In this document: positions 28,501 through 62,200 of the stretch, piece by piece
Layout of the letters: every line of letters begins with the position of its first letter
Position numbering within the stretch: the first letter of the stretch is position 1
Assembly (NCBI RefSeq): GCF_963853765.1
Contig: NC_088856.1
Coordinates: 14,446,001-14,510,000, forward strand
Direction: 5' to 3'
Source: Magallana gigas
Taxonomy: Eukaryota
Length of the DNA stretch: 64,000 nt
Notes under the pieces: generated by a model
Seen by the model: the letters and a program-made list of their open reading frames with translations, nothing else
Told to the model about the DNA's origin: nothing
Database searches by the model: none
Made by a program: the position numbers and the translations under genes

Positions 28501-31500
28501 ATCAAGTTGGAGGCTTTTGTTTTTGTGAAATAATTAGTCGTTTTTTGGTTTGTTAAAGCTGGTTTTTGTAAGAAAGCTTTCTTTTCCAATATGATTGATA
28601 CTACATTATTAGAATAGGTTAGTATGTGGGAGGTCATAATTGTAGATAAACTTAGCGGTAAGGCAAGAGGTAGCAATTAGTTACACCTTTACCCAGTGTC
28701 TACCTATCATTAGGACTAGATATTCTAGTTTACTGCTTTACTAGCCTTCATTAAATAGAAAAATATTGATATGTTTGTATAGCCAAGACCTTACTTTCAG
28801 TATGCATTTAATTGTTTCATCAACTCAGTATATGCTCAAATTTGTGTATGCCCAATATATGCTATTATTATTATCTGAAATGAGAAAATTCATCTAAAAT
28901 TTTAAAATAACTTCACTTATTGAAATCAAAACTCAATCCGCAAAAGGTCAGTCCCTTACAAAGTTCCTAATCAGTGAAATCTGGGAACAGTGCTAATTGC
29001 TAGGTCCCTTTGATTTCTGCATGTTTCTAAAATTACATGCTGAAAAAAGAGGACAAATTACATGCAGAAAACAAAATTACCCCAGCATAACAAAGATACT
29101 GGCTCTTTGACACAGATTTGAAGTCACGTAGTTTAGTCATTATGTTATTGTCTGGGTCTGTCGGTGGGGCCCCAAGGCTGAGTTTGACCGTACAGATTGT
29201 GCAGCTGAGGGGACTGAATGTCAAGGTCGTCTCAGCTGTCTGGGAATGTAACCATCTTGGAACTTTAAGGCCGCCATATAAAAAAAGGTTTGGGAGATCC
29301 TGCAATATTATGAGGAGGGGATCTACAATATATACATCTTGTTAATGAATAAAATCAGTTACTGAAACTTCATCCTTGCTAGACCCTTTAAAGTTAACAT
29401 ATTTTTAGTTTTAGGAATTTTGAATTCTTTAACTGTGTGGTTTATATCTTGAAATTCTTCATATTATATATTCAGAAACAATTAAATTATAAGCTTAGAC
29501 TATGGGAGATTCGAGTTCATTGATTTGACATTTTACAATGAATTTTAAAAAGAAATGATAAATTGCTATTAATCCCCTCATGTTGAGTCAGATTTATATT
29601 TAACCAGGCCTACCACAGTCTGATCTTTAGAAAGTTCATACTTTTACAGAAATTAGAATCCTCAGAAAACCTAATTTTTATTCCCTTGAGGGGAAAAATA
29701 AATTCCATGGGCTCTAGAGAGGAAATTAAGATGCCTAAAAAGTGAAGTCATGGCAGATTGTCGCAAAGAATAAGTGACGATCCCCTACAATTTTCACCAT
29801 ATCTGGTGAAACAGTAATTTAATGTCAGATTTTGTCAATTATGATAATATTATAAAAGTGTTTTTTTTCATAGAGCTTCCCCCAAAATTAATGATTGCTT
29901 ATAAATTTCTTGCTAGCAACAGAGGTTAATGAACTGTAGCAGATTTCCACTGCACCAAGGTTTTGATACCAATACACCTTTTCTATAACACATCCCTGTT
30001 TTATGAACTTGGTTTATTTTGTAGGACTGGCAGAGCTGGGAACAATGTGTGATGCCAGAAGAAGTTGCTCCATCATCGAAGACAACGGAATCAGTGCTGC
30101 CTATACCATTGCTCATGAACTTGGACATGTGTAAGTTGGCCTGCATTGCTGTCTCCTCAACATTTCTTTTTTCACTGTTTGCACAGATTGTTCTAAAGAG
30201 AGTTGCCATGTGGCTGAATTGAGAGGACATCTTTTTGCCAAACTTTAGAACCTTAGCTAATCACCTGAATTTATCATTAATCAGACCACTTTGATATATA
30301 TGACTGAAAACTCCACAAAACTGTGTAAGACTGAACAAGAAAGAAGTTGAAAATAAAATGTGCTTTTGTTTAAAAAATCATATACAGATAATAAAAAAAA
30401 ACCCAAAAACCAAAACAATATTATGCCAATCAGTCAAACAGAAGGGCTGCACAGTTGTGCTAAATTGTGGACAGAGAGAGAACAGAAAAAACCCCAGGAT
30501 CTTAATTGTAAATAATGCATGCTATACATAACTTACAAGCGTAAAAAACATAACACATAAGATAGATGTGATTCATTATGGATTTTCTTTGTAACTTTTT
30601 TTTATTTCCTGTCAATTAATTAAGTGTGCTATTAGTGTCTTCATTGTGAGAGTGATTTTGACACATCATGCCTTAATGAAGTCTGAATAATTGTTATTCT
30701 GATACAGCCACTCCACAGAATAGAAGCCATCAATATCCTCCTGTTTATTTATACAACACCTTTGATATCTATAATTTATCGTATGAATATATTTTTCTTT
30801 CTATCCCTATCGAGATTTGATCTAAGTAAATGCTGACTGTGCATATTGATATGGTGGGTAGATGTTCATTGATAGAATACATAATTATGAATGGAGGTTG
30901 GGCATTGAATCGGCAGTGCACTCTTGATATGTATTCGTACTACTACTGTGTACTTCACTGTGACCTAAATATCATAGATGTGTGGTATCTTGGTGCACAG
31001 GTAAAAGATTGGTCATGTCTACTATAGGCCTGTGTGCTGTGTTGAAATAAAGGGTTATAGGGAGCTTCTTCTACCTGTTACAATTTCAACAGCAGGTCAT
31101 TTTGTTACACAGGTGTGAATAGGCTGACCTAATTCACCATTTCCTGTCCGTATGACAGCAGTTGACCTATGCATGTAACCAGTTTTGGGGGACCGCTTTT
31201 GAGGTCATTTAGACAAGTGGGCTTTTTTAAGTGGATGACACTGCCAGCATCGGCTAATATTAATGCATTGAACTTTCATCTTCTGAAATGTGTGGCTAAT
31301 AGACCAAATGGACTCGGTGTGATTCAGACTTCTCTCATACACACTGTGGTCCAGATTTAGGCGATACGTTAAAGGGATACCCAAGTTATCAGAGCAGTAG
31401 TTCCGGAACTCGAGGTCAAGTAATAGTCAAGGACCTGTACAATAGGTGTATGCACATTTCACCGTTCTTAGATTTCTCTTACACAAAGCTAACAGGGAAC

Positions 31501-34500
31501 CTCATCTAGTTCTTCAGGTACTTGAGAGTTCATTAAAGTAGCCACTAATATACTTAGGCATTGGTAAGAGAGGAGTTCGTAAATCAGGATTCTGTGCTGG
31601 CGAAATTGTAGAAGCTCTAATTGAAAAGTGCTTGTCTGTGTCTGCCTATATAAAGAAAGTGGCAGTGTTATCAAAGAAAACATTAGGTATTTTGTTGCAT
31701 TAAGTAATAAATTAGAGGCAGGAATTGAACCTTGGTGATTTAGGGTGAGGGGAGAAGGGTGCCTATTGCTGTTATAGTCAGGTTTAAAGTGTCTTCTTGT
31801 CTATTCAGAGACAGTCTGCAGTGTCTGTCGTTTAATCATTATCTTTCTTTTTTTTTTTTTTTTTTAGATCTAAAGATTCTATAAATGTTGGAAATGGTGT
31901 CTCTTGCTTATTTTTCTTATAAAACTGGAGAAAAAAATTGAAATAGCTAGGTTAAAGATGATAAAATGAGAAAAGAAACTGATCCCGGTTGCATAGAAAC
32001 TTAAAATAAAAATGTTGGTACCTAATGACTTTTTATGCCAAGTAAAATCTTTCATATTATCAAAGAATATTAAGGATGCTGTTTCGATAATGATTTTAAA
32101 ATTAATTTTACGGCAATTAATGCTGATAAGAAATGCTTGATTCCGTTTCAAATTCCCAGCACAACTTGTGTGATATGGAGCTTATCAGCATCTTAATGAT
32201 TTAAGGGACAAATAATTCAGATAGATTGCAAAATATTGCACAGAAACCTGCAGGGAGATCTCAAAGTAACTTCCTGTATCCAATCCAGAGGGATAATTGT
32301 GTCAAACCCGAATTAAAAGCTCCCAAGTAATCTCCAAGACTTATCATTAAAGGCACCGATAGAAACTCCGATAGATAGAAATGACAAAAATTACAGCAAT
32401 TTATGAAGAAGTGTTATTTGGTGTATAAAAACTTTATCATGATAGGGATTAAATTTAGAAGTCTGAATGGTTTTTATGAATCTAAAATAGACAGATTTTA
32501 TATTTTCATTTACTGCCAATTTCTTATTTCTTTTCGATTGCAGCTAGAGTAGACATTTAAGATTTGGGAAATAAAAATTCATTGCATATTATGTCAAAGC
32601 AATAAAGAGTTGAAGAGGTTTAAATTAATTTATGTTTGAAATCTTTAAATAAAAGAAATAAACTGTCTGGGTGTCCTCCAATGAGTAAGAGAGAAAATTG
32701 AATTGATTTTTAGTGCAGAAAGATTAAGTCAGGAATTCAAAAACGGGTTGCAGAATCCTTGCTATATTTGTTTTCTTACTAAGTTAAGTATTTTCTCTTC
32801 ATGTGAGCCCAAGTTCAACCTATGAAAGAGATTTTAATGGGTAATTGATAAACAGTTGTAGATTTAAGTTTGAAGCTCATTTCCTTCTGAAATGGTAATC
32901 TACAATGGATATGGAGAAGTTTGAAGAAGGGTAGAATCATGTCCGTTCATTAATTAACCCCCTCCCTCGACATCCACCTTGACTTGACTGTCTTTTGAGC
33001 ATTTGCATGTTAAATGGAGATTGGACAAAATGCTTCATCATAGAGTGTGGTATTGTTTGGCAATTAAATGACCAGAATTTCAATTAACTTTGCAGCTGTA
33101 ATTAAGATCCGCGAGGTGAGTGAGTACCTGTGTGAATGAAGTCAAAGATATGGCTGTCTGACTATGTGTTTGACAGGTTCAGGGGAATAGGAGCTGTTTT
33201 TACAACCCATCAACTTGTGAAGCCTCTCTGCTTTTTTATCTGAGCTAAAATCAGATCGTATCAAGAGATTTGAATGATTATTGCCAAATACTCACACAGT
33301 CATTGTTTGATGTCAAGTAGCAAACCGCCAGGGGGACCCTGACATTTTTAAAGTTATGAATATTGTTGTGTGTAAAAATATTCTTATTTTTTACGTGAGG
33401 TCACTCACTGACAATATCGGATGAGTACTTCAAAGAAAACAGCAGGTGCATGTATATATCATATCAGCATTCCCTATTGTGTTTCTGAAGTCTGTTTTGG
33501 GGGGTATGAATCTAGAAGTGCATGGTGGCATAGAAAGAAGTACATCTTGCTTGGGCTAAAGTGCAAATAAAAAGCATACATGTATACATAATAGCTCAAA
33601 CTTTGATCACGTCTTAGAGTACTAAAATAATAAAATTTCTTATATAAGTTTACACAGAAACAATAAATAATCCAAGATAATATCTCGGCCAAATTTTAGG
33701 CTTTTTATAGCTTATTTCTAATGATAGACATTTTGAGAGAGGGGGGGGGATAAGAATTTTTTACTTTTGAATGGATGCTGAGTAAACATATTCAGACTTT
33801 GTGAATAATTTTAAGGATCCAAAGGTGATGGAAAGATATACATTTATTGTCTTTTCTCCACCGTTCGTGTCCATTTCATAAAGTTACAAGTCAGAGGTCT
33901 CTTTCATTATGAAAGGGATGGCATTCCTCGACCATGTATCAGCTGCTAATTAATGGAAGCATGCATCTCAATGACACTGAATCTTTGACCTGTTACATCA
34001 GGGTCATGAACACTTTTCACACATGGAATGACTGGGGGTGTGGGAGGACTGCACTAATTGTGATTATAAAAAGTACATGTAACTTTTTCACAAAGAGAGG
34101 CCTGACATGCAAATCAGTCACATATTAACCTGCCTGTCTCCATATAACTTGAGTATAAATTTGAATTTTATTCAAATTAAATAGACCGTATGGCTATTGT
34201 ACTAATTTATCTAGAGGATTTAATGATCGAGATTTAATGATGTAGATGTATATAATTATGATGTACTTTCACTACAGGTTCAGCCTACCTCATGATGATG
34301 ACAAAAGTTGTAAGAAGTTTCTGAAAGGCCCTTTCACTGACCACATTATGTCCCCCTCTCTGGATCACAAAACGAGCCCCTGGACCTGGTCTCACTGCAG
34401 CTCTGAACTCATCACTCGCTTCATTGAGTAAGTACTGTCAGGCAGTGCAGGCCTTTACCATCAAAGCTAGTACCTCCAGTGCCTTAATTATCATTTAGTC

Positions 34501-35222
34501 CGGCAACTTTCATGAAAATAAAAATTAAAAGAAAATTTATTGCAAAGTTCATAAATAGTATGACAAATAAATATGCTGAAATTTTTAAATGTATTTACAT
34601 TTCTCTCTTCTGTTACAAAAGATACAATATATTTTAAAAGCTTTTTTTACAATTACATGTACAAAACTCCATACTACACTAAATATTTTTTTTCCTGTTA
34701 CAAAAAATACAATTTTCATAAAAAATATTTCAGTTACAAAAATTTTCACATGTCTTTTGTTGTTTCAAAAGTTATGATATTTTGACATGCTTTGTTGTAT
34801 GATGCAGTGCAGGTTCAGCGGAGTGTTTATTGGATCAGCCTGGCCGCAGGAGAGTGCGAGCAGAGAAGGGGGAGGCTGGAGAACTGTACAGGATTGACAA
34901 GCAGTGCGAACTGATGTTTGGACCAGACTTCAAGATTTGTCCCTACATGGTAATAATCGCCCAAGTCACTAGTCTAATAGACAGAGACTATTAAGACCTG
35001 TTATTTATCGATTAATTAAAGAATTTTGCATAATTAGTTGGAAAAAATCATAAAGAAACATGTATTGAAATATTTTTCTCTTGATTTCAATAGCAAGACT
35101 GTAAGCGACTGTGGTGTACAGATAGCAAGTCCAAATCCAAGTCCTGTCAAACTCTCCACATGCCCTGGGCAGATGGAACAATATGTGGAGCTCAAAAGGT
35201 TGGTCCCCTCCCTCTCCCCCCT

Positions 35223-35271
<49 letters not shown>

Positions 35272-38200
35272 TGGTTGCAATCACATGATCATACACATTG
35301 ATTCATTAGTTAAGTTCTCCTATCCTCCTTTCTTATAAAATAAAATAAGGCATACTAATTTTTGCACGGAGGCAGATGTGTTTAAAGTTCTTTTGAAGTG
35401 CATGGTGTTCTTTATAGTAAAAGTGTACTTTATAAGAAAAAAGTTAATTTTTTGCATACAAGTAAAGCACACCAAAAAAATTAATCTGCCTGTAAAACCT
35501 ACCATTACAAATGTTGGCAGCATGGACAAGATAACTGATTTGGGTGATATTTTTTTAAATTGTATATACATCATATTATCTGCAGTGAAGGAGGCACAAA
35601 GATGTGCTGAAAAGTGAAACCAGATTACTTTTATCAGAATTATGTGAAAAAAAATTAACACATGTTGTGGAAAAATAAACTGTTAAAGAAGTGGCTTTTT
35701 ATCAAACTTGAATTCAGTACGTAAAGAATACCAGCAAAACACTTTTAATTTGTTGTTCTGGTGTTCTGAAATTGAATTGCCGGAATTGTTGATACAGATA
35801 TTCAGGAGAACACAGGCTTTACAGAAGCGATTTTACAATTTGTATTCAAAAGTAGGCAACACTTAACAGTTACATTATTCTTCACAAATACAAATTTGCA
35901 CTTAGTATCAAGGCACTGGAAGTTGTCTGATTCTTGAAGATTTCATATGTAAAATTTTATCATCAAGTGGAACTTTAAAGAAAACTTATTTTTGCAGAGA
36001 AGTGCAGCCAGCACCCTTTTAATCATACAATTTAACAGGATCACTCGAGGAGCATTAATAGATTTATTTGCAGAAATAATTTACAGACGATTACTGGTTG
36101 GCAGTATTCCTGATAATCTATTAAAATTTCATAATCTCTAGAATTGCCCCGTATTTTATAGACAGAGGTTTTGTGAGTTTATGTTTCCTCAAAAATAAAA
36201 GTGAACAGTGTCTCAATTTAAGAAGGCCAAGCTTTCAACAAACAGTAAAGTTTCTGCAGGTAGTTGGTAGATTGTATGATTATGAATTTACAGTTCCCTC
36301 GTGTTTATTTCCCCTTGATTTTTGAGCATAGTTCAAATACCCCACACAGCAGCAACATCGAAGAATCTTTACTGTATAGGAAGGTTTTATTGCTTGTTGC
36401 TTCATCATTATTAAAAATCTGATCAGCAACAGCACTATCCTATTTTTTATGTCCTGGAGAGTTCTGAAAAAGGAGACAAATTTGTCATCAGGGGAGGTAA
36501 TTAAAAATTATCTTTTGAAAAAGTTCTTCAATAAATAACTGTGTTTCTAGTTTGAAACACTTGAGGGGAACAGATGTTTTTAAAAAAGGTGTTCCAGTGC
36601 TGCAGTTTGTTGTGTACATCATCTTAACAGATTCAAATCATCAGGAAGTTTTTCCTAAGCAGTATACAGTTATAAAGCTCATGACTTCAGTAATAAATTT
36701 TTATGAGCAAAACACTCTTCATTAAGATAAGGGGCCCTAATCTCGATAGTAACCTGCCTTTAATTGAGGTGTAGGAATCTCCAGGTGAGACAGGCCAGGG
36801 TGTTTTATGTTAAGTTGCAAATCGCCAGATTTTTCTGTGCAACCCCCTTTTTTATTTTACATCAGTATTCTATGAAAAACAAAACCTGTTCTGAAGGTGG
36901 GAAATGATTACTGACGTCAATAAAGAAAAAAATGTTAAGTCGGTGGAAGGGCGTAGGGAGGAAAAATGACCTTGATCTGATTAATTTGAGTCAAAAAGGT
37001 CATAGACAATCAAAAGTTGTATCAGTTGATTTATCATTTGCCCCTTGTTCTGGAAATTATTACTCATTTATATGAAATGAAAATCAGCTTTCCAAAAAGT
37101 TGCTTCAATGTGTTACAGATGTTTCCCAATAATCCTTCAGAAATGATACTTGTCTGATTGTGTTTTATAGTTTTGATTTTGATAATGAGCACATGGTTCC
37201 CAGACAGACTGCGCTGTAATGAGCAAATATAAAGTACAATATGATTAAGACCTTTAACAAGCTATCTCTATGAAGTACAATTTGAATTAGATATGTGTTT
37301 GAAGTCACAATTTTTTTGTAAAAGAGAAAGTACAATGTGAATTAGACATATAAGAAACTGTCTATATGAAGTCAAAATTTTTTGTACAGAAGAAAGTACA
37401 ACATATTAAACAAACTATCAGTATCTCTATGTAGTCACAATTTTGAATGAAGAAGAATTGATGTAAAATGTTTGATTTTTTGCAGTGGTGCCAACATGGA
37501 GAGTGTGTACCAAAGTCTATCCGTAAACCTGTGGATGGGAGCTGGGGAGGGTGGCAGATGTACGGGGACTGTTCCAGGACCTGTGGGGGAGGTGTTCGAA
37601 TGGCAATCCGCAAATGTAACAGTCCAGAGTAAGTAATTGTAACAGCCAAGAGTAAGTAAATGTAGTACCTAAGAGTGATTAATTGTAACAGCCCAGAGTA
37701 AGTAAATGTAACAACCCAGAGTAAGTAAATGTAACAATTCAGAGTAAGTTATTGTAACAGCCAAGAGTAAGTAAATGTAGTAGCTAAGAGTGGTTTATTG
37801 TAACAGCCCAGAGTAAGTAAATGTAACAACCCAGAGTAAGTAAATGTAACAATCCAGAGTAAGTAATTGTAACAGCCAAGAGTAAGTAAATGTAGTAGCT
37901 AAGAGTGATTTATTGTAACAGCCCAGAGTAAGTAAATGTAACAACCCAGAGTAAGTAAATGTAACAATCCAGAGTAAGTAATTGTAACAGCCAAGAGTAA
38001 GTAAATGTAGTAGCTAAGAGTGATTTATTGTAACAGCCCAGAGTAAGTAAATGTAACAACCCAGAGTAAGTAAATGTAACAATCCAGAGTAAGTAAATGT
38101 AACAGCCAAGAGTAAGTAAATGTAACAACTCAGAGTAAGTAAATGTAACAGCTAAGAATAAGGTAATGTAACAGCCCAGAGTAACTAAATGTAACAGCCC

Positions 38201-41200
38201 AAGGTAAGTAAATGTAACAACCAGGAGTAGGTAAGTGCAACAGCTTAGGGTTAGTCTTTAATATGCGAAGACTCACTCTTTGACAGCAGTTTTATACGAA
38301 GAAACAACAGAAATTTAAAATGAGTCAAAAAAAGCTTTATCAGAATTTCAGATCTGATTTTGCAAAACATAAATTTATTGAAGTACAAATATCCAAAGAC
38401 TCATCAACTCTTCAGCCTTAACTTGGTACCTTGATTCTTGAATAGTGTAGTGCACCAAATCAATGCATGCAATAAGTCACGTCGTGCAAGGTGTATACCT
38501 GCAGAGACGGATGAGCAATAGAGGTTGTAAAACTTGTAGGAGAGAAGTAAATGGAATATTTCGGTGCTGCATTTTCTTGTAATGTCTTGTACTTTTCAAT
38601 GTTCTGTCATTGCAGGCCAGCCAATGGAGGATTGTACTGTACCGGGCGCAGAACCAGATACAAATCCTGTAACAACAAGGTGAGGTCAGGTTATGGATCT
38701 CCAAAACTCTTTTTCTTGCCTTTTCCCAATAGATAAAATGCAAGTTTTATGTTGCTTTAATGACTTGGAAGTGCACAGGAGTCAACGACCTGACAACAAT
38801 AACTTGTTTGTTAATGATCTCCCATGATGCACTGCAACAAAACCTACAACCTCCCAGCAGGCTCTCTGTGAAGTTGACAATTATGTATAATGAGACAAGT
38901 AACAGAATTTAGGTAGAAGGAAGTTAGTTTTTAACCTCTCAAGATGAGGGATACATGATTGAATCTGCAACTAAGTATTTTGTAAGGGTTGCTCCCTAGT
39001 TGATTGTTATCTAATTAATCATAAGGTGATAACAAAGAGATGTGAATAAGCCAAACACCCTAGTTAACACAAAACAGGTGTTTATACCAAGAATAAAGCT
39101 ACTGTTTTGAGTGATAGAAGCAAATGAGGAGACTGTGTGAATAATGAAATCTGCCCACTAAGTCCAAGAGGTGAACAGGTTCAAAGTCGTTCATCTCTTC
39201 ACATAAATAAACATCAATTATTGTGGTCCCAGGAAGTTCCGCCATATTGGCAGGGTTTTTCCTTGTTTACGAGAGCGGGGATCCTTGGGAGTTGAATAAC
39301 CTGAGAAACAAGGCTTCATTTTTTATATTTTTTTTTTCAATTTTTTTTCTGTTCACAGGTCTTAATGTTTGTTAATATTATTTTATTGTTTATAGTCAGA
39401 TAAACAAGACTCTTGGATGTTGTTAAGACTTCAGTATTGCATGGCCTTGGTATTTTTGTTTAGTCGGTATATTTTATCTTTTGCAGCCGTGTGATCCAGG
39501 CACCAAAGATTTTCGCGAGATTCAGTGCTCGGTGTTTGACAACAACCTGAAGCTGCAAGGGCTCCCCTCCAACGTGCGCTGGGTCCCCAAGTATGCTGGA
39601 AGTACGTTAGATTCAAACATGCATTGTTGACATGAGCACTTTCCAATCTATACCTCACTCATAAATCTGATCAAAGTATACAATTAATAAAAATAAATGC
39701 TCATTATTTATTGTTAAGTGAGATTCTTCACTGCTAAAATGAAATGGTTTGAATATCTTTGACTCCTTCTAAAAGTGATCAAGATTGCTTATATAGTTGT
39801 GTATACATTTGTAATTCCATTTAAATATGTGGTATATGTATTTGTATACTATGTTGTTTATAGGCTATTTCTTTTTGAAAATTTTGCATATTGGCTATTC
39901 GTTTATGTTGTATATTGTCTATTTTCATTTGTAGTTCGTATAAAGGATGCCTGTAAACTGTACTGCCGAGCCTCCTCTAGCTCCGCCTACTACCTACTGA
40001 AAGACAAAGTCGTGGACGGAACTAAGTGCGGACCTGATACATTTGACATGTGTGTGAATGGCATCTGCCAGGTAAAAATAAGATCATCTGGGTAACCTTT
40101 ATTGATTAATATAGAGATTGTTCTATTGTAACCATCTTGAACATGTAATTTGCACTCAATTTCATATGCATGGTGCATCAAAAATGCACTGGAGGTAATA
40201 AAGATGATAAACTTGAGATGTGATTTACAGAAAGCTGGCTGTGATAACAAACTGGGTTCTGAGTTGGTGGTGGATCGATGTGGAATTTGTGGAGGAGACA
40301 ACTCCACATGTCGCATGGAGCGAGTTTACAACCGATTCAACCTTGTCAATTTAACTTATGGTGAGCTTCCTTCTCTCCTACCTCCAAAATTGTATGTTTT
40401 TCAGTAAACAATAAAAGGACAATAACATATTATTGTATTTCTCTTGTTGAAGGGTATTTTGTGAATCTGTTTTTATTCTCTATAGGGTACAACTATGTTC
40501 ATACCATTCCAAATGGAGCAAGAGACATTCTGATCAAGCAGCACGGAGTAGTATCAGGGCTGGATGAGGACGGCAATTATCTAGGTGCATTGATATAGGC
40601 GTTTCTGTAGATTTTATCAAGCAAAGACGAGCTCGAATGAACTCAAGATTTTTGAAAAATAGAGATGATAAGCTCCTCTGTTAATAGAGGTAGACAAAGA
40701 GTTCTGTATATTTTAGAGTTTTTTAATGTTTTATTTTTGAAAGAATTTGTCAATAAATATCTTTTTAATGATTCTTTTTAGCACTAAAGAATGAGAGTCA
40801 GTATTTCATTTTGAACGGGAACAAAACCATCAACGTGGCCAAAACCAGGATCCGGGTGGCAGGTGCTTGGATCGAGTACAGTGGCTCGGGCGCTCTGATG
40901 GAGACCATCAATGCCACTGGACCAATACAAGAAAGCATCTCACTGTGGGTGAGTGGCTCACTAGCCTAGACTTAATGCAGCCAGTTTAAGTCATGGGACC
41001 TGTTAAACCCCTTTTGGTCATTCCAATGGTTTTGCATTCTTTTGCAGCTGGAATTCTTTCTTGGTGCAACCTTTTTTGATACTGGTAATAAAAGAAATGA
41101 GTTATGTTCCTTTTTTGCTAAGAGACATTTTTCAACACAAATCTTTCTCTCCTGAGGGTAATCAAGTACCAATATTTTTATATTAGAAGCAAATGTTCAA

Positions 41201-53200: not shown

Positions 53201-56200
53201 GAACTTTTTTGGTTTTTCATCCTAGAAACCTTTTTGTACTTGACGATGTACTTTACAATACATCAAGGAAAGGACATTACAATCACTAGGACATTTAAGC
53301 TTAGACTAATAATTTAAGAGAGATGAATAATGGATCAGCCTTGGGTTGTCTTTCTTCACCACATAAAATTTTACCCATCAAAACTAATTCTAAACAAATT
53401 CTTATCCTATATGTACCGGTATTAGTGAAAGAAGGCACATATGGTGTAACAATTTTAATAATCATGGAATAAGTTCTTATCAATCATCAATCATTTATCT
53501 CTGTAAAAGTTTGCAAAATCTATGGATATAACAATGAAAAAGATGTTGGTGTGCTTCATTTAAACTCATGTTCCCTTCAGTCATGATCACAGCTCAAGTA
53601 CCAAGTGCATGGAAAACATTGTCTAAATCCTTCTGGGGTGGGGGGAGGGGGGTTCCTTGCCAATGTTGTAGATCATGCAATCTCTAAAGATTACATTATT
53701 AATACTGTAGAAAAAACTTTCTGGTAATGGTTTGGAAACATTTGTTTTTTAAATTTTCATTATACAAGTACCAAGAAATATGAAAAATGTCTCACTCTTA
53801 AAATGACCTCTACAGTTACCATATAGTAACAACAGAAAATAACATCACAAAGAAAGGATTCTTGCCATTGATTGCTACGATTGGGAAGATTGGTGATGAT
53901 GCTTTTTCATTTTATAATGTTGTTTTAATGTGTGCTTTGTTATTTTTCAGGTAATCTGTGGTGCATATTATTTTTCAGTATATATTTTCTAGTCATTTTA
54001 GGTGCAATTTTGATTGTATTTGGTTTTAACTGTGATACTATGATGATCTTTTGTTATTTTTAATTAGCTTATTTATATTTGGATATATTTATTTTATCAG
54101 CAATATTTATATCATTACGATAGTTTTATATATATACATATATTCTGCCAGACACTTTGAGTCTGTAATTTACTATCTTTATATTATGCCAAATGAAGAT
54201 GTTGTACTTTTGTCATATTAAAGCTATTTTTGATACCACTTGTCATGTTTCTAAACCACTATGAGAAGGCAAATTAGAGAGAGTTCCATTCCTTGCTTTG
54301 GCAATGATACTCAACCACTTTATACCGTATCCACCACCCCTACCACCAACCACTTACCACCACCTAACCGATGCACTATGCCACCGAAACCATTGCACCA
54401 CCATTCCCAAGTGTATATGAATTACTGATTCAGCCAAAGTAGTTGAATTTTATGTCATTAAGAAGTAATTTTCTCCACAAACTCATCTCACTTTTCCCTT
54501 AAGAATATTTTTATCAGGTATTTTGGCATTGTAGTACAGATGATGCACCAAATGATGGTAATTTATGATTTTGGCAGAATTCATCATTAAAATATCTCCA
54601 TGACAATCATACTGTACTATGTACTTTTATTACAAAATGATATAAACTTAAAAGGCAAAAAACTTCCCATTTTCTTTGCAAATCTTTCATTGTCTGGGAA
54701 TGTTGTATTCCGTATGAAATAGCTATTTTAATGACAGTGTGATAGATTGGAGTAAGGCATTAAGGTTTTATTAAATAATGAGAAGGTGCAAAATTACATA
54801 GTTTTTGTATATATTTTTATCACATTATTATCTCCAATCTGCCATTGTTTCCTGTGGAAGACTAAAAATAGTTACTTAAAAAAGTACATCGGAGGAATTA
54901 TAAATGTTAAGAGTAACGCACAATGTCATGGAGCCCCATAGAGTTTATCTTCCTTCACTCCTAGAGAGCTTCCTTGTCAGTTTTTCAAATCTACAGTAGA
55001 ACCCACATATTCTGAGCCTTGGATGCTTCATTATTCAAAACAAATAAATTTTGGAGAAATACCCTGCTCGCAGCCCCATCAGTCTTGTAGACACCTGACT
55101 AATTCTCTTAAAGTCTGCCTCATGTTCAGCAGGTAGCTCCACCCATAAATGTCAATTCTGGCCCTTCTCTACATACTTCAGTTTTGAAAACTGGCATGTG
55201 TTAGAAACGAGTGGATATTGTTGGAGTATGGCATGGAACTCTCTGCAAAATTTAAAAATTACAGTCCAACCTGGAATTACCGAATCCTTTTGGCAAAGAT
55301 TCTTTCAAATTATCTATTACTTAAGAAAAATGATGATTGAAAGCCTTGAAATTTAGAAATGTGTGAGATTCCACGGTTTGGAATGTGTTTCATTCCAGCA
55401 GAGCTCGGGATGAACACCATTGTTTTAGTTTTGAAAAGCTGTTGTGCAGGTCTCAATAAGTGCAAAGTAATTCATGCCAGATAGACTAAGCATAAAAAAA
55501 CAATTGAAACAATTTTTCAACCAAAGAGGCAAATAACAGAGAAACTAACAGTTCTATAGGACCATTGTGTCTCTCTTATTGCTTCTTGCTTTTGAATGTT
55601 TGAGATTAATGATTTGCCTTCTCATCAAGTGGTTTTGTCTAGAACTGCAAGCATTTGAACACAGAGACGAAAAACCCTGTAATGTTAGTTTAATTGACTC
55701 TTTGGTTCTTCTTCTTCTGTTTGTACATTTATTTTCATTTGTTGAATCTAGGAGAAAAAAAGGTTATTGTATAAGTGTGCTAGATCAGTGGATTCAAACC
55801 TTGGGATAATCCTTGTTTGTTTTTCAGGGAAAGCCACCTGTAATTTTACTCTTTAGAGATTCAAAAAGCTCTGTCTAGATTATTCCACAGAGAACTATTG
55901 TGATTGTTTTTATTTTGCAGCTTGTTCTATCATGTTTTAGCAATACCTCAAGAAACCAAAAAGGTTCTTCCAAACATATGCCTAATTCTGTATGCTTTTT
56001 GCAAAAAAAAATCTTTTAAGATTAATTACCCTTGAAATGGCTTGTAAACATTAATTATGAAGATGTTAAATCAAATTAATCAAACTCCATGCTGATAAGA
56101 ATACAAGTGGTGCAGTAAATGGACAGGAAAAATAAGGTCTTGTCCCTCTTCTGCAGGGAGATTGATAGAAACTCATCCATATCAAAAGATTGATGCAGGG

Positions 56201-59200
56201 AATCATTCAAAGGGGGGCCATTATTCATGAGTATCCTCTCCCCCTTTGAGGATCTAAACTGGGCTGGGTAAAGTCATAAGGTTAATGAGAGTAATGGCCA
56301 GACAACCTCTATTCTTATCCTTGGCCTTGCAGGTTGCTTGTAAGGTCAAGATCCTTTTGCAGTTGACTGTTCTTTTTGTTACTTAAGTACCAAGGACAAT
56401 ATTGCAATTCATAGAGAATCTTCAGTTTGTGTTGGAGATAATATATGGTAGCGGTAGCTTCTGTATAGCCCTTTAATACTCATTCCTGTGTTATAGATAA
56501 GGTACATGTATATAGTCTTGTACCTTGACTTAGAATATACCCCACCCCTTGTCAGACTGGACTCATAGTAAATCTTTGTATTTACACTGTCAATTCAGAG
56601 CACAAGAATAATATACTAAAATCAAAACAAATGAATATATGAATATTCTGGATATGATGTTAAGTTGAAATTGTTCTCTTTTTCATCTCATTTACAACCC
56701 ACCCTTAGGTTTTGCATTATGGTTCTTTGTATCAAATTGAGAGTGATCTTCAAACATAACTTACAGTATCTTTTTGCTTGCAGTGCTCAGTGACCTGTGG
56801 AAGAGGACATCAGCAGCGGTCGGTCAGGTGTGAAGATGATTCTGGAACGGAACAAGACCCCTCGGAGTGCCCGAGCGGTAAACCTAGAAACATCAAGCAG
56901 TGTCACATGGGTAGGTGTCCGAAGTGGCACAGACAGAAGTGGTCCAGGGTAAGTCTCTTATTGAGCTACAGTAAAACCTGGTTATGGTGAACATGGTTGT
57001 AATGAATTCATACTTACAGTGAAGTCAGATCTAGTTACCCTAAACTTAAAACATATCACAGATTTATTAGATAGAATGATTAGAAATGTGTTTTTAATGA
57101 ATCAAAATTGTTTATGCCTGGCACTGCATTATCTGTTTGTTTTATAGTACTGTAATGCATCTTTATATAATTCATTCAGCCATAGTTGTTATATTCAGTG
57201 TATGATTACTGCACACTATTTTATAAAGTTATAATTAATTTGTTATTTATTTCAGTGCTCCGTTACATGTGGTAAAGGAGTAAAAACAAGAAATCTGATT
57301 TGCAAGACTCGATATTTCCAAGTTGTGGATGCCTCATATTGTAGTGCAAAAAAGAAACCCAAAACTCAGAAGGAGTGTAGCCGTCGACCATGTTCCAACT
57401 TTGCCTGGAAGAGGACTTCCTGGACTCAGGTAAGATTTGTCAAATCAGGCAGCAGCCTTGTCCAGTGTGGGATTTCCTAACTGGAAATATACAGTTTTGT
57501 CAATGGCTGGCTCAGTTCAATAGGAAGCAGTTCTAGTAGAGGATACAGTCAGTTGGTGACAATAGTTGCTTACAACAGAAATGAAGTATACAGAATTCAG
57601 TTGATTTTAGACTCAGTTCTTATGAAACGAAGTATTGACAGACCCATATCTAAGATATAGGAAGAAATGATTAATCAGAAAGTTAAAAACTGGATAAATG
57701 GGTTGGAATGAGTCTGTTGGTAGACCTATTGTGGTCACTGTGGCATCAGTCATAGAAACTCCTCTCTCTCTCTGTGGCTGCTGCTCTATTGGTGATGGCT
57801 CAGTTTTAACAGTTTAGGATCGACTCCTGTGATAGCTGGTTCCTCACAGTCAGACATGTCACACCATCCACACTGTACCCACTGCTCCCCCCATTTACTC
57901 CACCATGATCAACATGTCAAGTGGTTTGTTTGGTTTACCAAACATCTAGTTCCTACATCCATAATTTCTCACAATTCTTTAATCTTCAGAATTATGGTTA
58001 AATTATTGCTCTCAAAAGAGGATGAGCATATATCATTAAAAAGATATTTGCCAGGTCTCACTGCTGGGAAGCTCTAGATGTAAGAGTGTGTGGGGTGGGG
58101 GCTGACTGTTCTAGTATCAGTCTTTTAGTACACTAGCCCTTGTACCGGTACAGTGTATGACAGACGTCAGAACAGCAGACTGTGAGCTGGTGTTTGATAA
58201 AAACATGTTTGTATTCCAACTGTGTCAGGAATGCTTTTTGTGTAGTTATTTGCACTCTTTTTACATATCTAGTACAAAGATAATGAATCAATTAAAGATA
58301 GGCTGTTATTTCATGAAATTTTACTCAGAACCCTTTAGTGCTAGTAAATGACTTCACTGTTTTCCAAACAACCTCTGCAACAAAAAGCGTTCCTTGTAAC
58401 ACACTGTAACATCTATCCATTTCATGGGAGCATAAAGTTAAATGAGGTACTTAAATTTCTGATCCCTCTTGAATTTTACCAATAAACTGTCCTAGCTTTA
58501 AGTTCGCTGGAAATCATTTTTGTCTGTCTAAGTTTTTCATTCCTAAATGATTGTTACAGATATTGGAACATGTAAAATTAAGAAGGGCATTGCTCTCTGA
58601 TTATACAGGAAAATCAAGGCCAAACTTTAATTGGATGTCTGTATGATTATTACAAAGGAATATAAAATATGTGAGAAAATAACTAAATAACAACAACATC
58701 AGATTTTCTTTGATATGCCAACCAAAAAATTGAATAATACTAAGAAGGTGTAATTTAGAAGAACATAAAAATGGATGAAAAAAATGAGAGGAATTTAATT
58801 TGTATTTCTGGGATTGCGTCACGATTTGTAGATTGAATTAGTGTTTGGTTGTGATGGAGGAGGGTCTGTCTGGGAATCTAGGTCACACGGAAGCTTGCTG
58901 CTCGCGACCGTCTAAGTATGCACTATTGCATGTTCTGAAGGTTTGGAGGAGGAATTTAACACCCAAACATGGAGAAACTATCAGAGAGGGCATGCCAGTA
59001 TTGCAGCATTAAATGAAGGCTCCAATAAAGAGATGCTGATTTGAAAGAGAAAGTGGAAGATAAAGAAATTTGATTAAATGATCTGTACTTGTTTCCTTCT
59101 AATTAAATTTGTTATGAAGTGTCAGTTTGGAAATTCTTGTGTTGGATGAACTGTTCATCATATATGTGTACTATTATTCACATCGCCTGCACTTAAAGTT

Positions 59201-62200
59201 AAGGTTTTTAGAATGTATATGATTCAGAAGTTCAAACTTTTTCACAAGTTTTTGCAAATGGCTGTTTAGTTTTTTTTTAAGGTAAAATAAGATCCTGCCA
59301 AGTATTTCGTGTTTTATATTATTTGTTTTATTAATATTAAAATCATAATTCTGTAGTTCAATGACTTTTCTTTATTATCTTACTTAAAATGAAATTTAAT
59401 TTGATAAAAACTTTACATACTGGTAAAAAAAATTCTATAATGACAATTTTTACTTTACTATGCAAGACTATTTTTTTTTAAATGGAACATTGAAATCGAA
59501 TTTTTTTTTTTGTCTTTTATTTTTAACATTATGTTGATGTAACAATTTGTAATTGTCCTTGTTGCAGTGCTCCCAGACCTGTGGCTTTGGTACAAAGAAC
59601 CGTGAGGTGTACTGTGTGGACCGCCGGGGACAGCGGGTGGACGCCACGTTCTGTGGTCAGCTGCACAAACCCAAGTCTCGGCGCCGCTGTAATGAGTTCC
59701 CCTGTCCCTACATCTGGAACACTTCTCCCTGGTCAGAGGTATGGGCAACCAATCCTTGGTTTTAGACTGGGATTTTATTTATGGTAGAAAAATAAAACAT
59801 ATCAAGGAGAATTTATTTTAATGTATATTTTAAAAATTGAGACTTTGTGTCACTCCTTTTGCCTATAGAGAATAGTGGTTGTTGCTCTTTCTTGATCAAT
59901 GTGTAAAGCTGCTTAAAAATTCTATTAAGTTAAAGAATGCTGGTTAAAAAAACATTAAAGCAGCAGTAATAAACTGTTTCCATAAAAAAATGGTGCAAAA
60001 GAGTTTTTTTTACTGTGTTAAGGAAGATAACTATGGTTTAACTTGAGGCTTTATACATCTACAGTGCAATGCTACCTGTGGGAATGGTTTGCAAACCAGA
60101 ACGACTGTCTGTCAAGCTGTCACGAAGGAGGGGTGGGTCCTGCCTGGATCTGTGCCCTACGGCTGCCGCCCTGAGGAGAAACCGCCCACTGTACAGCGTT
60201 GTAACTATGGAGACTGTGGCTCCGCCCATCATTGGGCTATGGGGTCATGGGGGAAAGTAAGAACCTGCATTAGATTCTTTTAACAAATAAATAGAATTAA
60301 TCACTAGAAGCACAATTTTCTCTTAAGTTGATATATTCCTTTATGCATGGTTAGGTAAATAATTAATAGTTCATTCAAAACTAATGTCAACTAACTGATT
60401 TATATACTTGTGAATATATTATATACTAATTTATGATAAACTTGATGGGAATTCTACCTTTCAAGTGTCCTCCCTGTTTGATGTGTGTGTGTTTTGAGGT
60501 AATGGATGAACTATGTTTATGTTTTAGCACTAAATCTCTTGCACTGTTTCCCACTTGGTGGGTGCAGTTAGCAAGGTCCAGGGGAGTAAGTAGTTTTCAC
60601 CGCTTCAACAAGCACTGCAAAGCCCATCTATTGCTTTATGAATAAGCCTGCTTCCAATGTCTTCAAGGAGTTGAAAAACTTGTTGTTGGAATGACTAAAA
60701 CTTATTTTGACCATCCATTTTTTTACCTAAAGGAAGTTTGTTATTATTGTACCATATCGATAAAGTTTTTGTTTTAAAATAATGTTTTTGAATATAGGCA
60801 ATTTTCACTTAAGTTGATAAAGAACGATATTCATTTTGATGAGATGCTCATGAGACATTAGGAGACAGGCTTACAATACAAGGGACACATGATGAAACAA
60901 TACAATGTCCAATGCGTAAAAGCCCTTTGCACAGTAGCTTTTTATGCTGTATTAAATCAGCAATATTTGAGAAGGAGTGGCTAGATTTTAAATCATTTAC
61001 TATAAGGAGCTTTTTATCAAGTGGATGCCAAGACCACATTTTCAGAAAATGTTTTAGCAGCCATATTTTGCATCTTTTACATATGATATTTGTAGAAGTA
61101 AATGAACAGATTAAAAGGTTGAGTTTAGTTATAACTAGTTTTTAGGATTTATTATAACAAAGATAAAAATCCTTTGGTATTTGGTGTAGCAATTAAAAAA
61201 AATTAGATCAATAGATATGTTTATAAATGATAAATTGCATTGTAAAAATGGTGTGGTTTACTTACAAAAGGATAAAAAAGGATAGAGATTTGCAATAGGT
61301 CATATATAAATCATTTATTATCAGATGATTAATAGTTAGTCTATCATTAAAAGCGTAATTTTTAAAAGGGAGATTGATAATGCAACCTAACCCTGATTTT
61401 TACAATAATTCTTACCATTCAGTGTTCCGCACGATGTGGTTGGGGTATTGAGAGGCGTCTCGTTCTCTGTGTCGACGTCCTTGGAAGGCGACAATCTCGG
61501 AAACGGTGCAACCCTGAGTTACGACCGGAGGCTCAACAGGACTGTTACACTGGACCATGTAAGAAAGATTTCTGTTCCCAAAATATTGTAGTTTAGGGTA
61601 AAAATATCAATATTTTTTTTAAAGCTATAAATGCATAGATTTTTGGAAGGAACCATGCTAAATTATTTGTACTTGAAGGAACCATGCTAAATTATTTGTA
61701 CTTAGAATATCATATATGATATTTCTTATACACTGCTAGAATATCATATATGATATCTCTTATACACTGCTAGTTTTATAATCTGGCCAGCAAGATTCAT
61801 ATCAAAGGTGAAATCTGATTATCAGGTACTGTATCAATTAATGTAAAATCCATTAAATTTTCCAGGCTATGCAAGATCTTGTGCAGAACTCAAGGAAAAG
61901 ACCAAGATTCGTCATGATGACACCTACAGTTTACTGGTCAATCGAAGAATACTCCAGGTAAGTCTGGGTTTTACTGACCCAGTTGAATATAAGAGAAAAA
62001 GTACAATAAAATAAATACTCATTGGAATAGTCTATATATAATAGAATTTTCACTTTTTGACAGATATATTGCAAGAATATGAGGAAAGAGCCATTAGAAT
62101 ATGTCTCCTTAACAGCTGACAACTTTGCTGAAGTCTATGGTTTGAAGTAAGTAAATAAATATATCTCCTATTCATGCAAGTGCATTATGATATAATCATT

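What the first reader, a model, noticed from the sequence alone, without database searches (positions are those of the whole stretch)
37612..38246. Minisatellite built from a splice junction: about 20 tandem 5' splice donors behind one in-frame stop
Seen: the 23-bp unit is exactly the last 17 nt of the TSR1 exon plus GTAAGT (AAATGTAACAGTCCAGA|GTAAGT, 37612-37634), amplified about 27 times into the intron with a 115-bp five-unit higher-order structure. Twenty units, including the real one, keep an in-register GTAAGT. One distal unit (AAG|GTAAGT, GT at 38204) fits the donor consensus better than the authentic AGA|GTAAGT. Reading past the authentic donor hits CCA GAG TAA (stop 37630-37632), so every decoy donor gives a premature stop. 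Inference: the array is either a U1-binding/decoy array that must be suppressed, or a copy-number-tunable switch toward NMD or a truncated protease (pro + catalytic + disintegrin, no ancillary domains). VNTR alleles could then change enzyme dose.
Basis: partly seen in the sequence, partly recalled or inferred. Interest (0 to 1): 0.8.

Follow-up and report, generated by a model that had tools for sequence, protein, structure and literature searches.

The report
Splice-donor minisatellite in oyster ADAMTS9 intron
A 23-base piece spanning an exon end and its splice signal in an oyster ADAMTS9-type protease gene has been copied about 27 times into the intron, but transcripts use only the first copy, the array varies between oysters and is missing in related species, and this kind of repeat is already known from human genes such as F7.

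Summary
A 23-bp x 27.5 array (115-bp higher order) starts in the last 17 nt of the TSR1 exon. It repeats GTAAGT in register 20 times. Read-through meets a TAA at once. One distal unit (AAG|GTAAGT) is a stronger donor than the real one.

The functional reading is not supported.
- RNA from three libraries shows one junction for this intron, 37628->38616. In both contig libraries its depth is about that of the next junction.
- Full-length transcripts of a congener splice at the same point.
- Crassostrea virginica and Ostrea edulis have a single-copy junction and short introns of 340 and 319 nt.
- A second, 97.5%-identical oyster assembly has 22.5 units with a different interior and no strong decoy.
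- The donor hexamer is not conserved better than the rest of the unit.

This is a young, fast-changing intronic VNTR born from the ancestral junction. It belongs to the known class of junction-spanning minisatellites (human F7, IFI6, CBS, LMNB2, PDGFA), where the most upstream donor wins. This scan has already noted five others elsewhere in the same genome.

Rare decoy use hidden by NMD is not excluded. RNA depth over the array is higher than over the flanking intron, and this is unexplained.

The parts
10260..63353 (+). Part of the ADAMTS9/20-type (GON-1-type) metalloprotease gene that lies in the window, from the furin-site exon to the C-terminal GON-domain exons
   Evidence: Exon-by-exon tblastn of P0160, named 'ADAMTS9 isoform X1 [Magallana gigas]', residues 192-1926. 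Pfam hits on exons: Reprolysin, ADAMTS_CR_2, TSP_1, ADAMTS_CR_3, TSP1_ADAMTS. All stranded reads indicate a + strand RNA.
37486..37628 (+). Exon coding the first part of TSR1 (WCQHGEC...CSRTCGGG...KCNSP, phase 2 at its end)
   Evidence: Sequence; Pfam TSP_1, E 1.9e-05; RNA contigs 37484-37629 and joint 37628->38616.
37612..38244 (+). Minisatellite, 23 bp x 27.5 (115-bp five-unit higher order). Unit 1 is the last 17 nt of the exon plus GTAAGT.
   Evidence: TRF; unit table; unique to this locus in the genome; its consensus unit equals the C. virginica junction.
37629..37634 (+). Authentic 5' splice site, AGA|GTAAGT, the only donor seen in RNA
   Evidence: Joint 37628->38616 GT..AG in X21 (2 reads), X15 (contig depth 401) and X16 (255.9). 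Scores 8.6 bits against a matrix of this gene's 28 other donors, whose median is 8.3.
37630..37632 (+). In-frame TAA met by read-through or by use of any decoy donor
   Evidence: Direct reading, CCA GAG TAA. The + strand of the array is closed in all three frames.
38204..38209 (+). Strongest decoy donor, unit 26, AAG|GTAAGT
   Evidence: 12.0 bits, better than 27 of the gene's 28 other donors; 9 of 11 positions match the U1 complement. Absent from the second assembly L011. No joint from it in RNA.
37629..38615 (+). Intron of 987 nt. About 616 nt are array and about 371 nt are unique.
   Evidence: Joint ends. The orthologous introns are 340 nt (C. virginica), 319 nt (O. edulis) and 875 nt (L011).
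38616..38679 (+). Exon coding the second part of TSR1 (..[21 protein letters not shown])
   Evidence: Joints 37628->38616 and 38679->39485; tblastn of P0160 residues 595-616.

Best explanation
This is a young, selectively neutral or nearly neutral intronic VNTR. A 23-bp piece spanning the TSR1 exon-intron junction of an oyster ADAMTS9-type gene was duplicated in tandem by slippage or unequal exchange. It then expanded and keeps turning over, which shows as a 5-unit higher order in this assembly. The splicing machinery uses the first, most upstream donor, the one paired across the 143-nt exon with the upstream acceptor. The identical downstream copies stay silent, as shown experimentally for the human F7 intron 7 minisatellite. 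Shown here: the anatomy, uniqueness, polymorphism, absence from two outgroup oysters, and sole visible use of the first donor. Inferred: the origin by slippage, the 'first donor wins' mechanism, and neutrality.
For: Array anatomy. Unique in the genome. RNA: the only joint in this intron is 37628->38616. In the two contig libraries its depth is about that of the next junction (X15 401 against 437; X16 255.9 against 255.9); in X21 it has 2 raw reads against 4. Three full-length transcript contigs of a 94.6%-identical congener, from three runs, are spliced at the same point. The RefSeq-derived proteins P0160 and P0272 run straight through ..KCNSPEPANGG... C. virginica and O. edulis have a single junction copy and introns of 340 and 319 nt. 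The TRF consensus unit is identical to the C. virginica junction, which I take to be the ancestral form. A second assembly, 97.5% identical over 15.6 kb, has 22.5 units, 15 in-register GTAAGT, a different interior and no AAG|GTAAGT unit; only 6 unit types are shared out of 18 and 16. Divergence per site is 0.10 in GTAAGT against 0.14 in the other 17 nt, so no clear selection acts on the donor motif. Human precedent: in F7 only the most upstream of up to nine identical donors is used, and pseudo-sites take over only when the upstream ones are inactivated (PMC1557585).
Against: Sensitivity to rare isoforms is low. The raw-read library gave only 2 reads on the authentic junction, contigs drop rare variants, and NMD would remove decoy-spliced mRNA. 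Unit 26 is close to a perfect donor, and in F7 perfect-consensus pseudo-sites did compete. RNA depth over the array exceeds the flanking intron in all three RNA libraries: about 3-fold in raw reads and 5- to 6-fold in contig depth. It does not do so in the one DNA library. This may be a repeat-collapse effect or a real excess of RNA that contains the array.
Confidence: 0.8

Rival explanations
1. The decoy donors are used at a low but real rate. Each use places the TAA in the mRNA and sends it to NMD, so array length or the presence of the strong AAG|GTAAGT unit tunes ADAMTS9 dose.
For: Eighteen decoys equal the authentic site over positions -3 to +6, and unit 26 is stronger. The stop is confirmed. 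The array length and the strong unit are polymorphic. RNA depth over the array is above the intron background in three RNA libraries. In human IFI6 and CBS the first two pseudo-sites are used.
Against: No decoy joint was found in two assembled RNA libraries where the authentic joint has depth 401 and 256. The authentic joint is about as deep as the next junction there. The array is absent from two related oysters with the same gene. The donor motif is not preferentially conserved.
Confidence: 0.12
2. The array is a U1 snRNP landing pad. Many U1 sites just behind the real donor help its recognition, suppress premature cleavage and polyadenylation in the intron, or hold and stabilise the excised intron piece in the nucleus.
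For: There are 19 strong U1-complementary sites within 600 nt. Each unit also carries AGTAAA, which I recall as a weak poly(A)-signal variant. Array RNA is in excess over the rest of the same intron in three RNA libraries.
Against: The relatives splice the same exon without any array. The authentic donor is already of median strength for this gene. The array is not conserved in content. The depth excess may be a mapping or collapse effect.
Confidence: 0.06
3. The array is an assembly artefact, a collapsed or expanded repeat.
For: Higher-order copies 3 and 4 are 100% identical, a pattern that assemblers can create.
Against: An independent assembly has an orthologous 22.5-unit array at the same junction. 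DNA contigs of another sample enter the array from both sides and cover it at single-copy depth. RNA contigs carry array units.
Confidence: 0.02

Closest known systems
Human F7 intron 7 minisatellite (37 bp x 5-9), Borensztajn et al. 2006, PMC1557585
   Same: The first monomer spans the exon-intron boundary. The donor is repeated identically in the intron. The array is length-polymorphic. Only the most upstream donor is used in normal mRNA.
   Different: The oyster unit is shorter (23 bp), more numerous (22-28 units) and has a 5-unit higher order. One distal unit is stronger than the real donor. The donor is GTAAGT rather than the weak GTGGGT. No mutational test has been done here.
Human IFI6 (6-16) intron 2 minisatellite (Turri et al. 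1995, as cited in PMC1557585)
   Same: About 25 pseudo-donors lie behind the authentic one, a number close to this array.
   Different: [quoted passage not shown] Here every decoy gives a premature stop and none is seen in RNA.
Human CBS intron 13 31-bp VNTR (15-20 units), LMNB2 100-bp repeat (10-15) and PDGFA intron 4 81-bp repeat (16-18), as listed in PMC1557585
   Same: These are junction-spanning VNTRs. In LMNB2 and PDGFA only the authentic donor is used.
   Different: CBS uses two pseudo-sites, and the title of the cited Lievers et al. 2001 paper links its VNTR to reduced enzyme activity. No such link is known here.
Other splice-donor minisatellites in the same oyster genome noted by this scan (OvoA, a neuropeptide receptor, ERCC6L, OSTF1 and one more)
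   Same: Same build: an exon end plus donor amplified 17 to 100 times. The follow-up agents report that only the first donor is used.
   Different: Different genes and units, so independent births. These are unchecked AI notes.

Membership tests
Junction-spanning minisatellite (F7 / IFI6 / CBS / LMNB2 / PDGFA type) | The first monomer contains the exon-intron boundary | tested here: met
   Unit 1 is 37612-37634, that is 17 exon nt plus GTAAGT. The exon end at 37628 is fixed by RNA joints.
Junction-spanning minisatellite (F7 / IFI6 / CBS / LMNB2 / PDGFA type) | A head-to-tail array in the intron repeats the 5' splice site | tested here: met
   27.5 units, 20 with GTAAGT in register.
Junction-spanning minisatellite (F7 / IFI6 / CBS / LMNB2 / PDGFA type) | Variable copy number between alleles | tested here: met
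   27.5 units here against 22.5 in L011, which is 97.5% identical in the flanks. A DNA contig of a third sample shows another unit order.
Junction-spanning minisatellite (F7 / IFI6 / CBS / LMNB2 / PDGFA type) | Normal mRNA uses the most upstream donor, alone or with the next one or two | tested here: met
   The only joint is 37628->38616, in three RNA libraries. Congener transcripts agree. Sensitivity to rare isoforms is limited.
Junction-spanning minisatellite (F7 / IFI6 / CBS / LMNB2 / PDGFA type) | Pseudo-sites work when the upstream sites are inactivated | not testable with these tools
   Needs minigene mutagenesis.
ADAMTS9/20 (GON-1-type) metalloprotease gene | Order reprolysin, disintegrin-like, TSR1, Cys-rich, spacer, many C-terminal TSRs, GON domain | tested here: met
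   Pfam hits on exons. The window matches P0160 residues 192-1926 in order; P0160 carries PF08685 (GON) among its precomputed families. Named relatives are ADAMTS9 and ADAMTS20 across animals.
Regulated unproductive splicing coupled to NMD (poison-exon type) | A stop-containing isoform is detectable and the alternative event is conserved | tested here: not met
   No decoy joint in RNA. The array is absent from C. virginica and O. edulis. The response to NMD block was not testable.
Pseudo-5' splice-site silencer or decoy that represses the real donor | Use of the authentic donor is lowered by the neighbouring pseudo-sites | tested here: not met
   In the two contig libraries the authentic junction depth is about that of the next junction, 401 against 437 and 255.9 against 255.9. 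Contig depth is only a rough measure.

The most novel reading that the evidence does not exclude
The array is more than a passenger. Its roughly 19 strong U1 sites make array-containing RNA accumulate, either as a U1-bound stabilised or nuclear-retained intron piece or as decoy-spliced transcripts that escape assembly. Array length and the allele-specific near-perfect donor (unit 26) would then set ADAMTS9 output. Junction-spanning minisatellites, which recur in this oyster genome, would be a general source of heritable dose variation.
Probability: 0.08. Interest if true: 0.6.

Novelty: new member of a known kind. Interest (0 to 1): 0.25.

Why it matters
As a single locus it matters little. 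It is one more minisatellite that copies a splice donor, and it behaves like the human F7 case. It does extend the 'most upstream donor wins' rule to a mollusc, under a hard natural test: 18 identical decoys and one stronger decoy within 600 nt. With the other cases this scan has noted in the same genome, oysters offer many natural, polymorphic test loci for 5' splice-site choice. If array length did change ADAMTS9 dose, it would be a heritable regulator of an extracellular-matrix protease, but nothing here points that way.

Tried and rejected
1. The 56-aa exon ORF searched against the protein collection, to find exon-sized fragments in relatives: no candidate.
2. Exact look-ups that led nowhere:
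   - P0160 is not on record, probably withheld as the window's own or a near genome.
   - The ORF at 38551-38733 is not on record.
   - The P0002 contig ends 200 nt after the exon.
   - The P0279 contigs stop about 800 nt downstream of exon 34279, at the CT microsatellite, and never reach the array.
3. A third protein search for intermediate congeners found only the M. gigas cluster, O. edulis and C. virginica. The array could therefore not be dated within Magallana.
4. A metagenome scan for the inter-unit 21-mer gave 0 hits.
5. A genome-wide scan for three GTAAGT within short gaps gave 4267 matches against 1467 for the reversed control. The listed matches, all from the start of contig C1, are mostly dispersed repeat families, for example a 20-bp GTAAGTCATGCTGGATTATT satellite at many loci. 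It therefore says nothing about arrays derived from donors.
6. Rfam on 35000-40000 gave no match, so the array is not a known RNA gene cluster.
7. Selection on the donor hexamer: divergence is 0.10 against 0.14 per site among distinct units, not a clear difference.
8. Assembly artefact: rejected.
9. The raw-read library X21 had too few reads (2 on the authentic junction) to measure decoy use.
Full report
**What is there.**
The window carries most of an ADAMTS9/20-type (GON-1-type) metalloprotease gene on the + strand.
- Its exons give Pfam hits to Reprolysin, ADAMTS_CR_2, TSP_1, ADAMTS_CR_3 and TSP1_ADAMTS.
- They match, in order, residues 192-1926 of a protein named ADAMTS9 isoform X1 of Magallana gigas, at about 96% over the exon matches.
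- Public runs that hold the stretch are labelled as oyster or oyster metagenome.
- The exon at 37486-37628 codes the first part of TSR1. The next exon starts at 38616.

**The observation.**
- TRF reports 37612-38244 as 23 bp x 27.5, and the same array as 115 bp x 5.4 at 93%.
- Cut in 23-nt register, unit 1 is the last 17 nt of the exon plus GTAAGT. Twenty of 28 units keep GTAAGT in register.
- Higher-order copies 3 and 4 are identical at 115/115.
- Reading through the donor gives CCA GAG TAA, and all three + frames of the array are closed.
- I built a matrix from this gene's 28 other donors. The authentic AGA|GTAAGT scores 8.6 bits, against a median of 8.3. Eighteen decoys are identical to it over positions -3 to +6. 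Unit 26 (AAG|GTAAGT, GT at 38204) scores 12.0 and beats 27 of the 28.
- The unit is found nowhere else in the 564-Mb genome. The array was therefore born on the spot and is not a dispersed satellite or transposon piece.

**Origin and age.**
- In Crassostrea virginica the same exon ends AAATGTAACAGCCCAGA|GTAAGT, in a single copy, and the intron is 340 nt.
- In Ostrea edulis the junction is also single and the intron is 319 nt.
- The TRF consensus unit of the array is letter for letter the C. virginica junction. A 94.6%-identical congener also has AGC at that codon in its mRNA. I infer that the array was copied from the ancestral junction, and that the AGT of today's first unit is a later synonymous change.
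- Without the array the intron would be about 371 nt, close to the outgroups.
- A second public oyster assembly (GCA_025612915.2, locus L011) is 97.5% identical over 15.6 kb. It has an orthologous array of 22.5 units and an 875-nt intron.
- The two arrays share the first unit and the last unit types. Their interiors differ: 15 against 20 GTAAGT, a twice-repeated 4-unit block instead of the 5-unit higher order, and only 6 shared unit types out of 18 and 16. The strong AAG|GTAAGT unit is missing in L011.
- A DNA contig from a third sample shows yet another unit order, a joint 38212->37799.
- This is the behaviour of a fast-evolving VNTR. It also rules out an assembly artefact.

**Splicing.**
I laid one raw poly(A) RNA library (X21), two RNA contig sets (X15, X16) and one DNA contig set (X13) on 35050-39700, listing differences from 1 read in 100.
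- The only joint in this intron is 37628->38616, GT..AG: 2 raw reads in X21, contig depth 401 in X15 and 255.9 in X16.
- The next junction, 38679->39485, has 4 reads, 437 and 255.9.
- No contig joins any decoy to 38616.
- All stranded reads have the first mate on the - strand, as expected for a + strand RNA in most stranded libraries.
- Three full-length transcript contigs of the congener, from three further runs, are spliced at the same point.
- The RefSeq-derived proteins read straight through ..KCNSPEPANGG...
- The stable mRNA therefore uses the first donor.
- The limits are plain. Two raw reads give no power against rare isoforms, contigs drop rare variants, and NMD would hide decoy-spliced mRNA.

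**No sign of selection on the array.**
- It is absent in two relatives that keep the gene.
- Its content is not conserved between near-identical haplotypes.
- Among distinct unit types, divergence from the consensus is 0.10 per site in GTAAGT against 0.14 in the other 17 nt. That is neither protection nor purging of donors.
From general knowledge a TSR has three disulfides. I take such a product to be poorly folded rather than a tidy short protease (inference).

**Comparison with what is known.**
Minisatellites whose first monomer spans an exon-intron boundary are a described class. Borensztajn et al. 2006 (PMC1557585) list these cases:
- F7 intron 7: 37 bp x 5-9, only the most upstream donor used.
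- IFI6/6-16: 25 pseudo-sites, the first two used.
- CBS intron 13: 15-20 units, two pseudo-sites used.
- LMNB2: 100 bp x 10-15.
- PDGFA intron 4: 81 bp x 16-18.

[quoted passage not shown] The next copy is used only when the upstream ones are destroyed. Only a perfect-consensus pseudo-site competes, and then only partly.

The oyster array meets every defining feature I could test. It is a new member of this kind, in a mollusc and in a new gene. Its unit 26 comes close to the 'perfect site' condition, and still no joint from it is seen.

After I had reached this reading, the scan's own notes showed five more such arrays in other pieces of the same genome. They lie in OvoA, a neuropeptide receptor, ERCC6L, OSTF1 and one more gene. 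Follow-up agents report first-donor use for four of them. These are unchecked notes.

A rough count suggests random births alone could give a few hundred junction-spanning arrays genome-wide. I used about 9 minisatellite loci per 64 kb here and 36 donors in this window. No special mechanism is needed (inference).

**Unexplained.**
RNA depth over the array is above the flanking intron.
- In X21 about 7 sense reads fall in 37858-38325. Depth there is 0.9-3.7, against about 0.5 in the neighbouring introns and 0 in the rest of this intron.
- In X15 the array bins have 190/155/296/43 against about 31 in the flanks.
- In X16 they have 108/29/322/56 against about 20.
- The DNA set X13 is flat, 19/22/38/16 against about 21.
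- Collapsed repeat contigs, longer arrays in those animals, or read placement may explain it. So might a real excess of array-containing RNA: a protected intron piece, or rare decoy or terminated transcripts.

**Verdict.**
The functional interpretation is not supported, apart from the VNTR part. The best explanation, at about 0.8, is a neutral, young, polymorphic minisatellite born from the splice junction and tolerated because the first donor is chosen. It is an ordinary member of a known kind and of modest interest. A small chance remains that array length or the strong decoy affects output.

Noticed in passing
window 37629-38325 (table 2): RNA depth over the array is about 3-fold (raw reads) to 5-6-fold (contig depth) above the flanking intron in three RNA libraries, but about 1-fold in a DNA library. 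No decoy junction is assembled. It may be a repeat-collapse effect or a real excess of array-containing RNA.
   Followed up: partly
same genome, other pieces (s1-358996, s1-359005, s1-356082, s1-361653, s1-356076): The scan has noted five other minisatellites built from an exon end plus its splice donor in this oyster genome, so the arrangement recurs here. My rough chance estimate gives the same order of magnitude.
   Followed up: partly
G000 contig C1, e.g. 812977-813423, 1426344-1426649, 1723488-1723933, 1927907-1928353, 2189651-2190117: A 20-bp GTAAGTCATGCTGGATTATT-type satellite recurs as arrays at many loci, as do 33-, 41- and 44-bp GTAAGT-containing arrays. They look like tandem repeats carried by dispersed elements. 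They swamp any genome-wide count of periodic GTAAGT.
   Followed up: no
window 37300-37450: Three degenerate direct repeats of about 60 bp (..GAAGTCACAATTTTT..AGAAAGTACAA..) lie just upstream of the TSR1 exon's acceptor. TRF did not report them.
   Followed up: no
window 35232-35268: A perfect (CT)18.5 microsatellite lies 34 nt into the intron after the exon that ends at 35198. Short-read contigs from many public runs break there.
   Followed up: no
window 51075-51143: An 18-bp x 3.8 repeat starts about 70 nt downstream of the donor at 51004/51005. It is a second small intronic minisatellite near a donor, but it does not include the junction.
   Followed up: no
window 47302-47343 (exon about 47110-47535): A Thr-rich, mucin-like coding repeat lies in the linker between TSR blocks. 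This stretch is the least conserved against the named M. gigas protein, 73.6% in that match.
   Followed up: no
window 17740-17922: A perfect 90-bp x 2.0 tandem duplication in a large intron, a likely recent seed of a minisatellite.
   Followed up: no
window 37558: An exonic A/G variant in the TSR1 exon appears in X16 and in all 6 X21 reads. It could serve as a marker for allele-specific expression tests.
   Followed up: no
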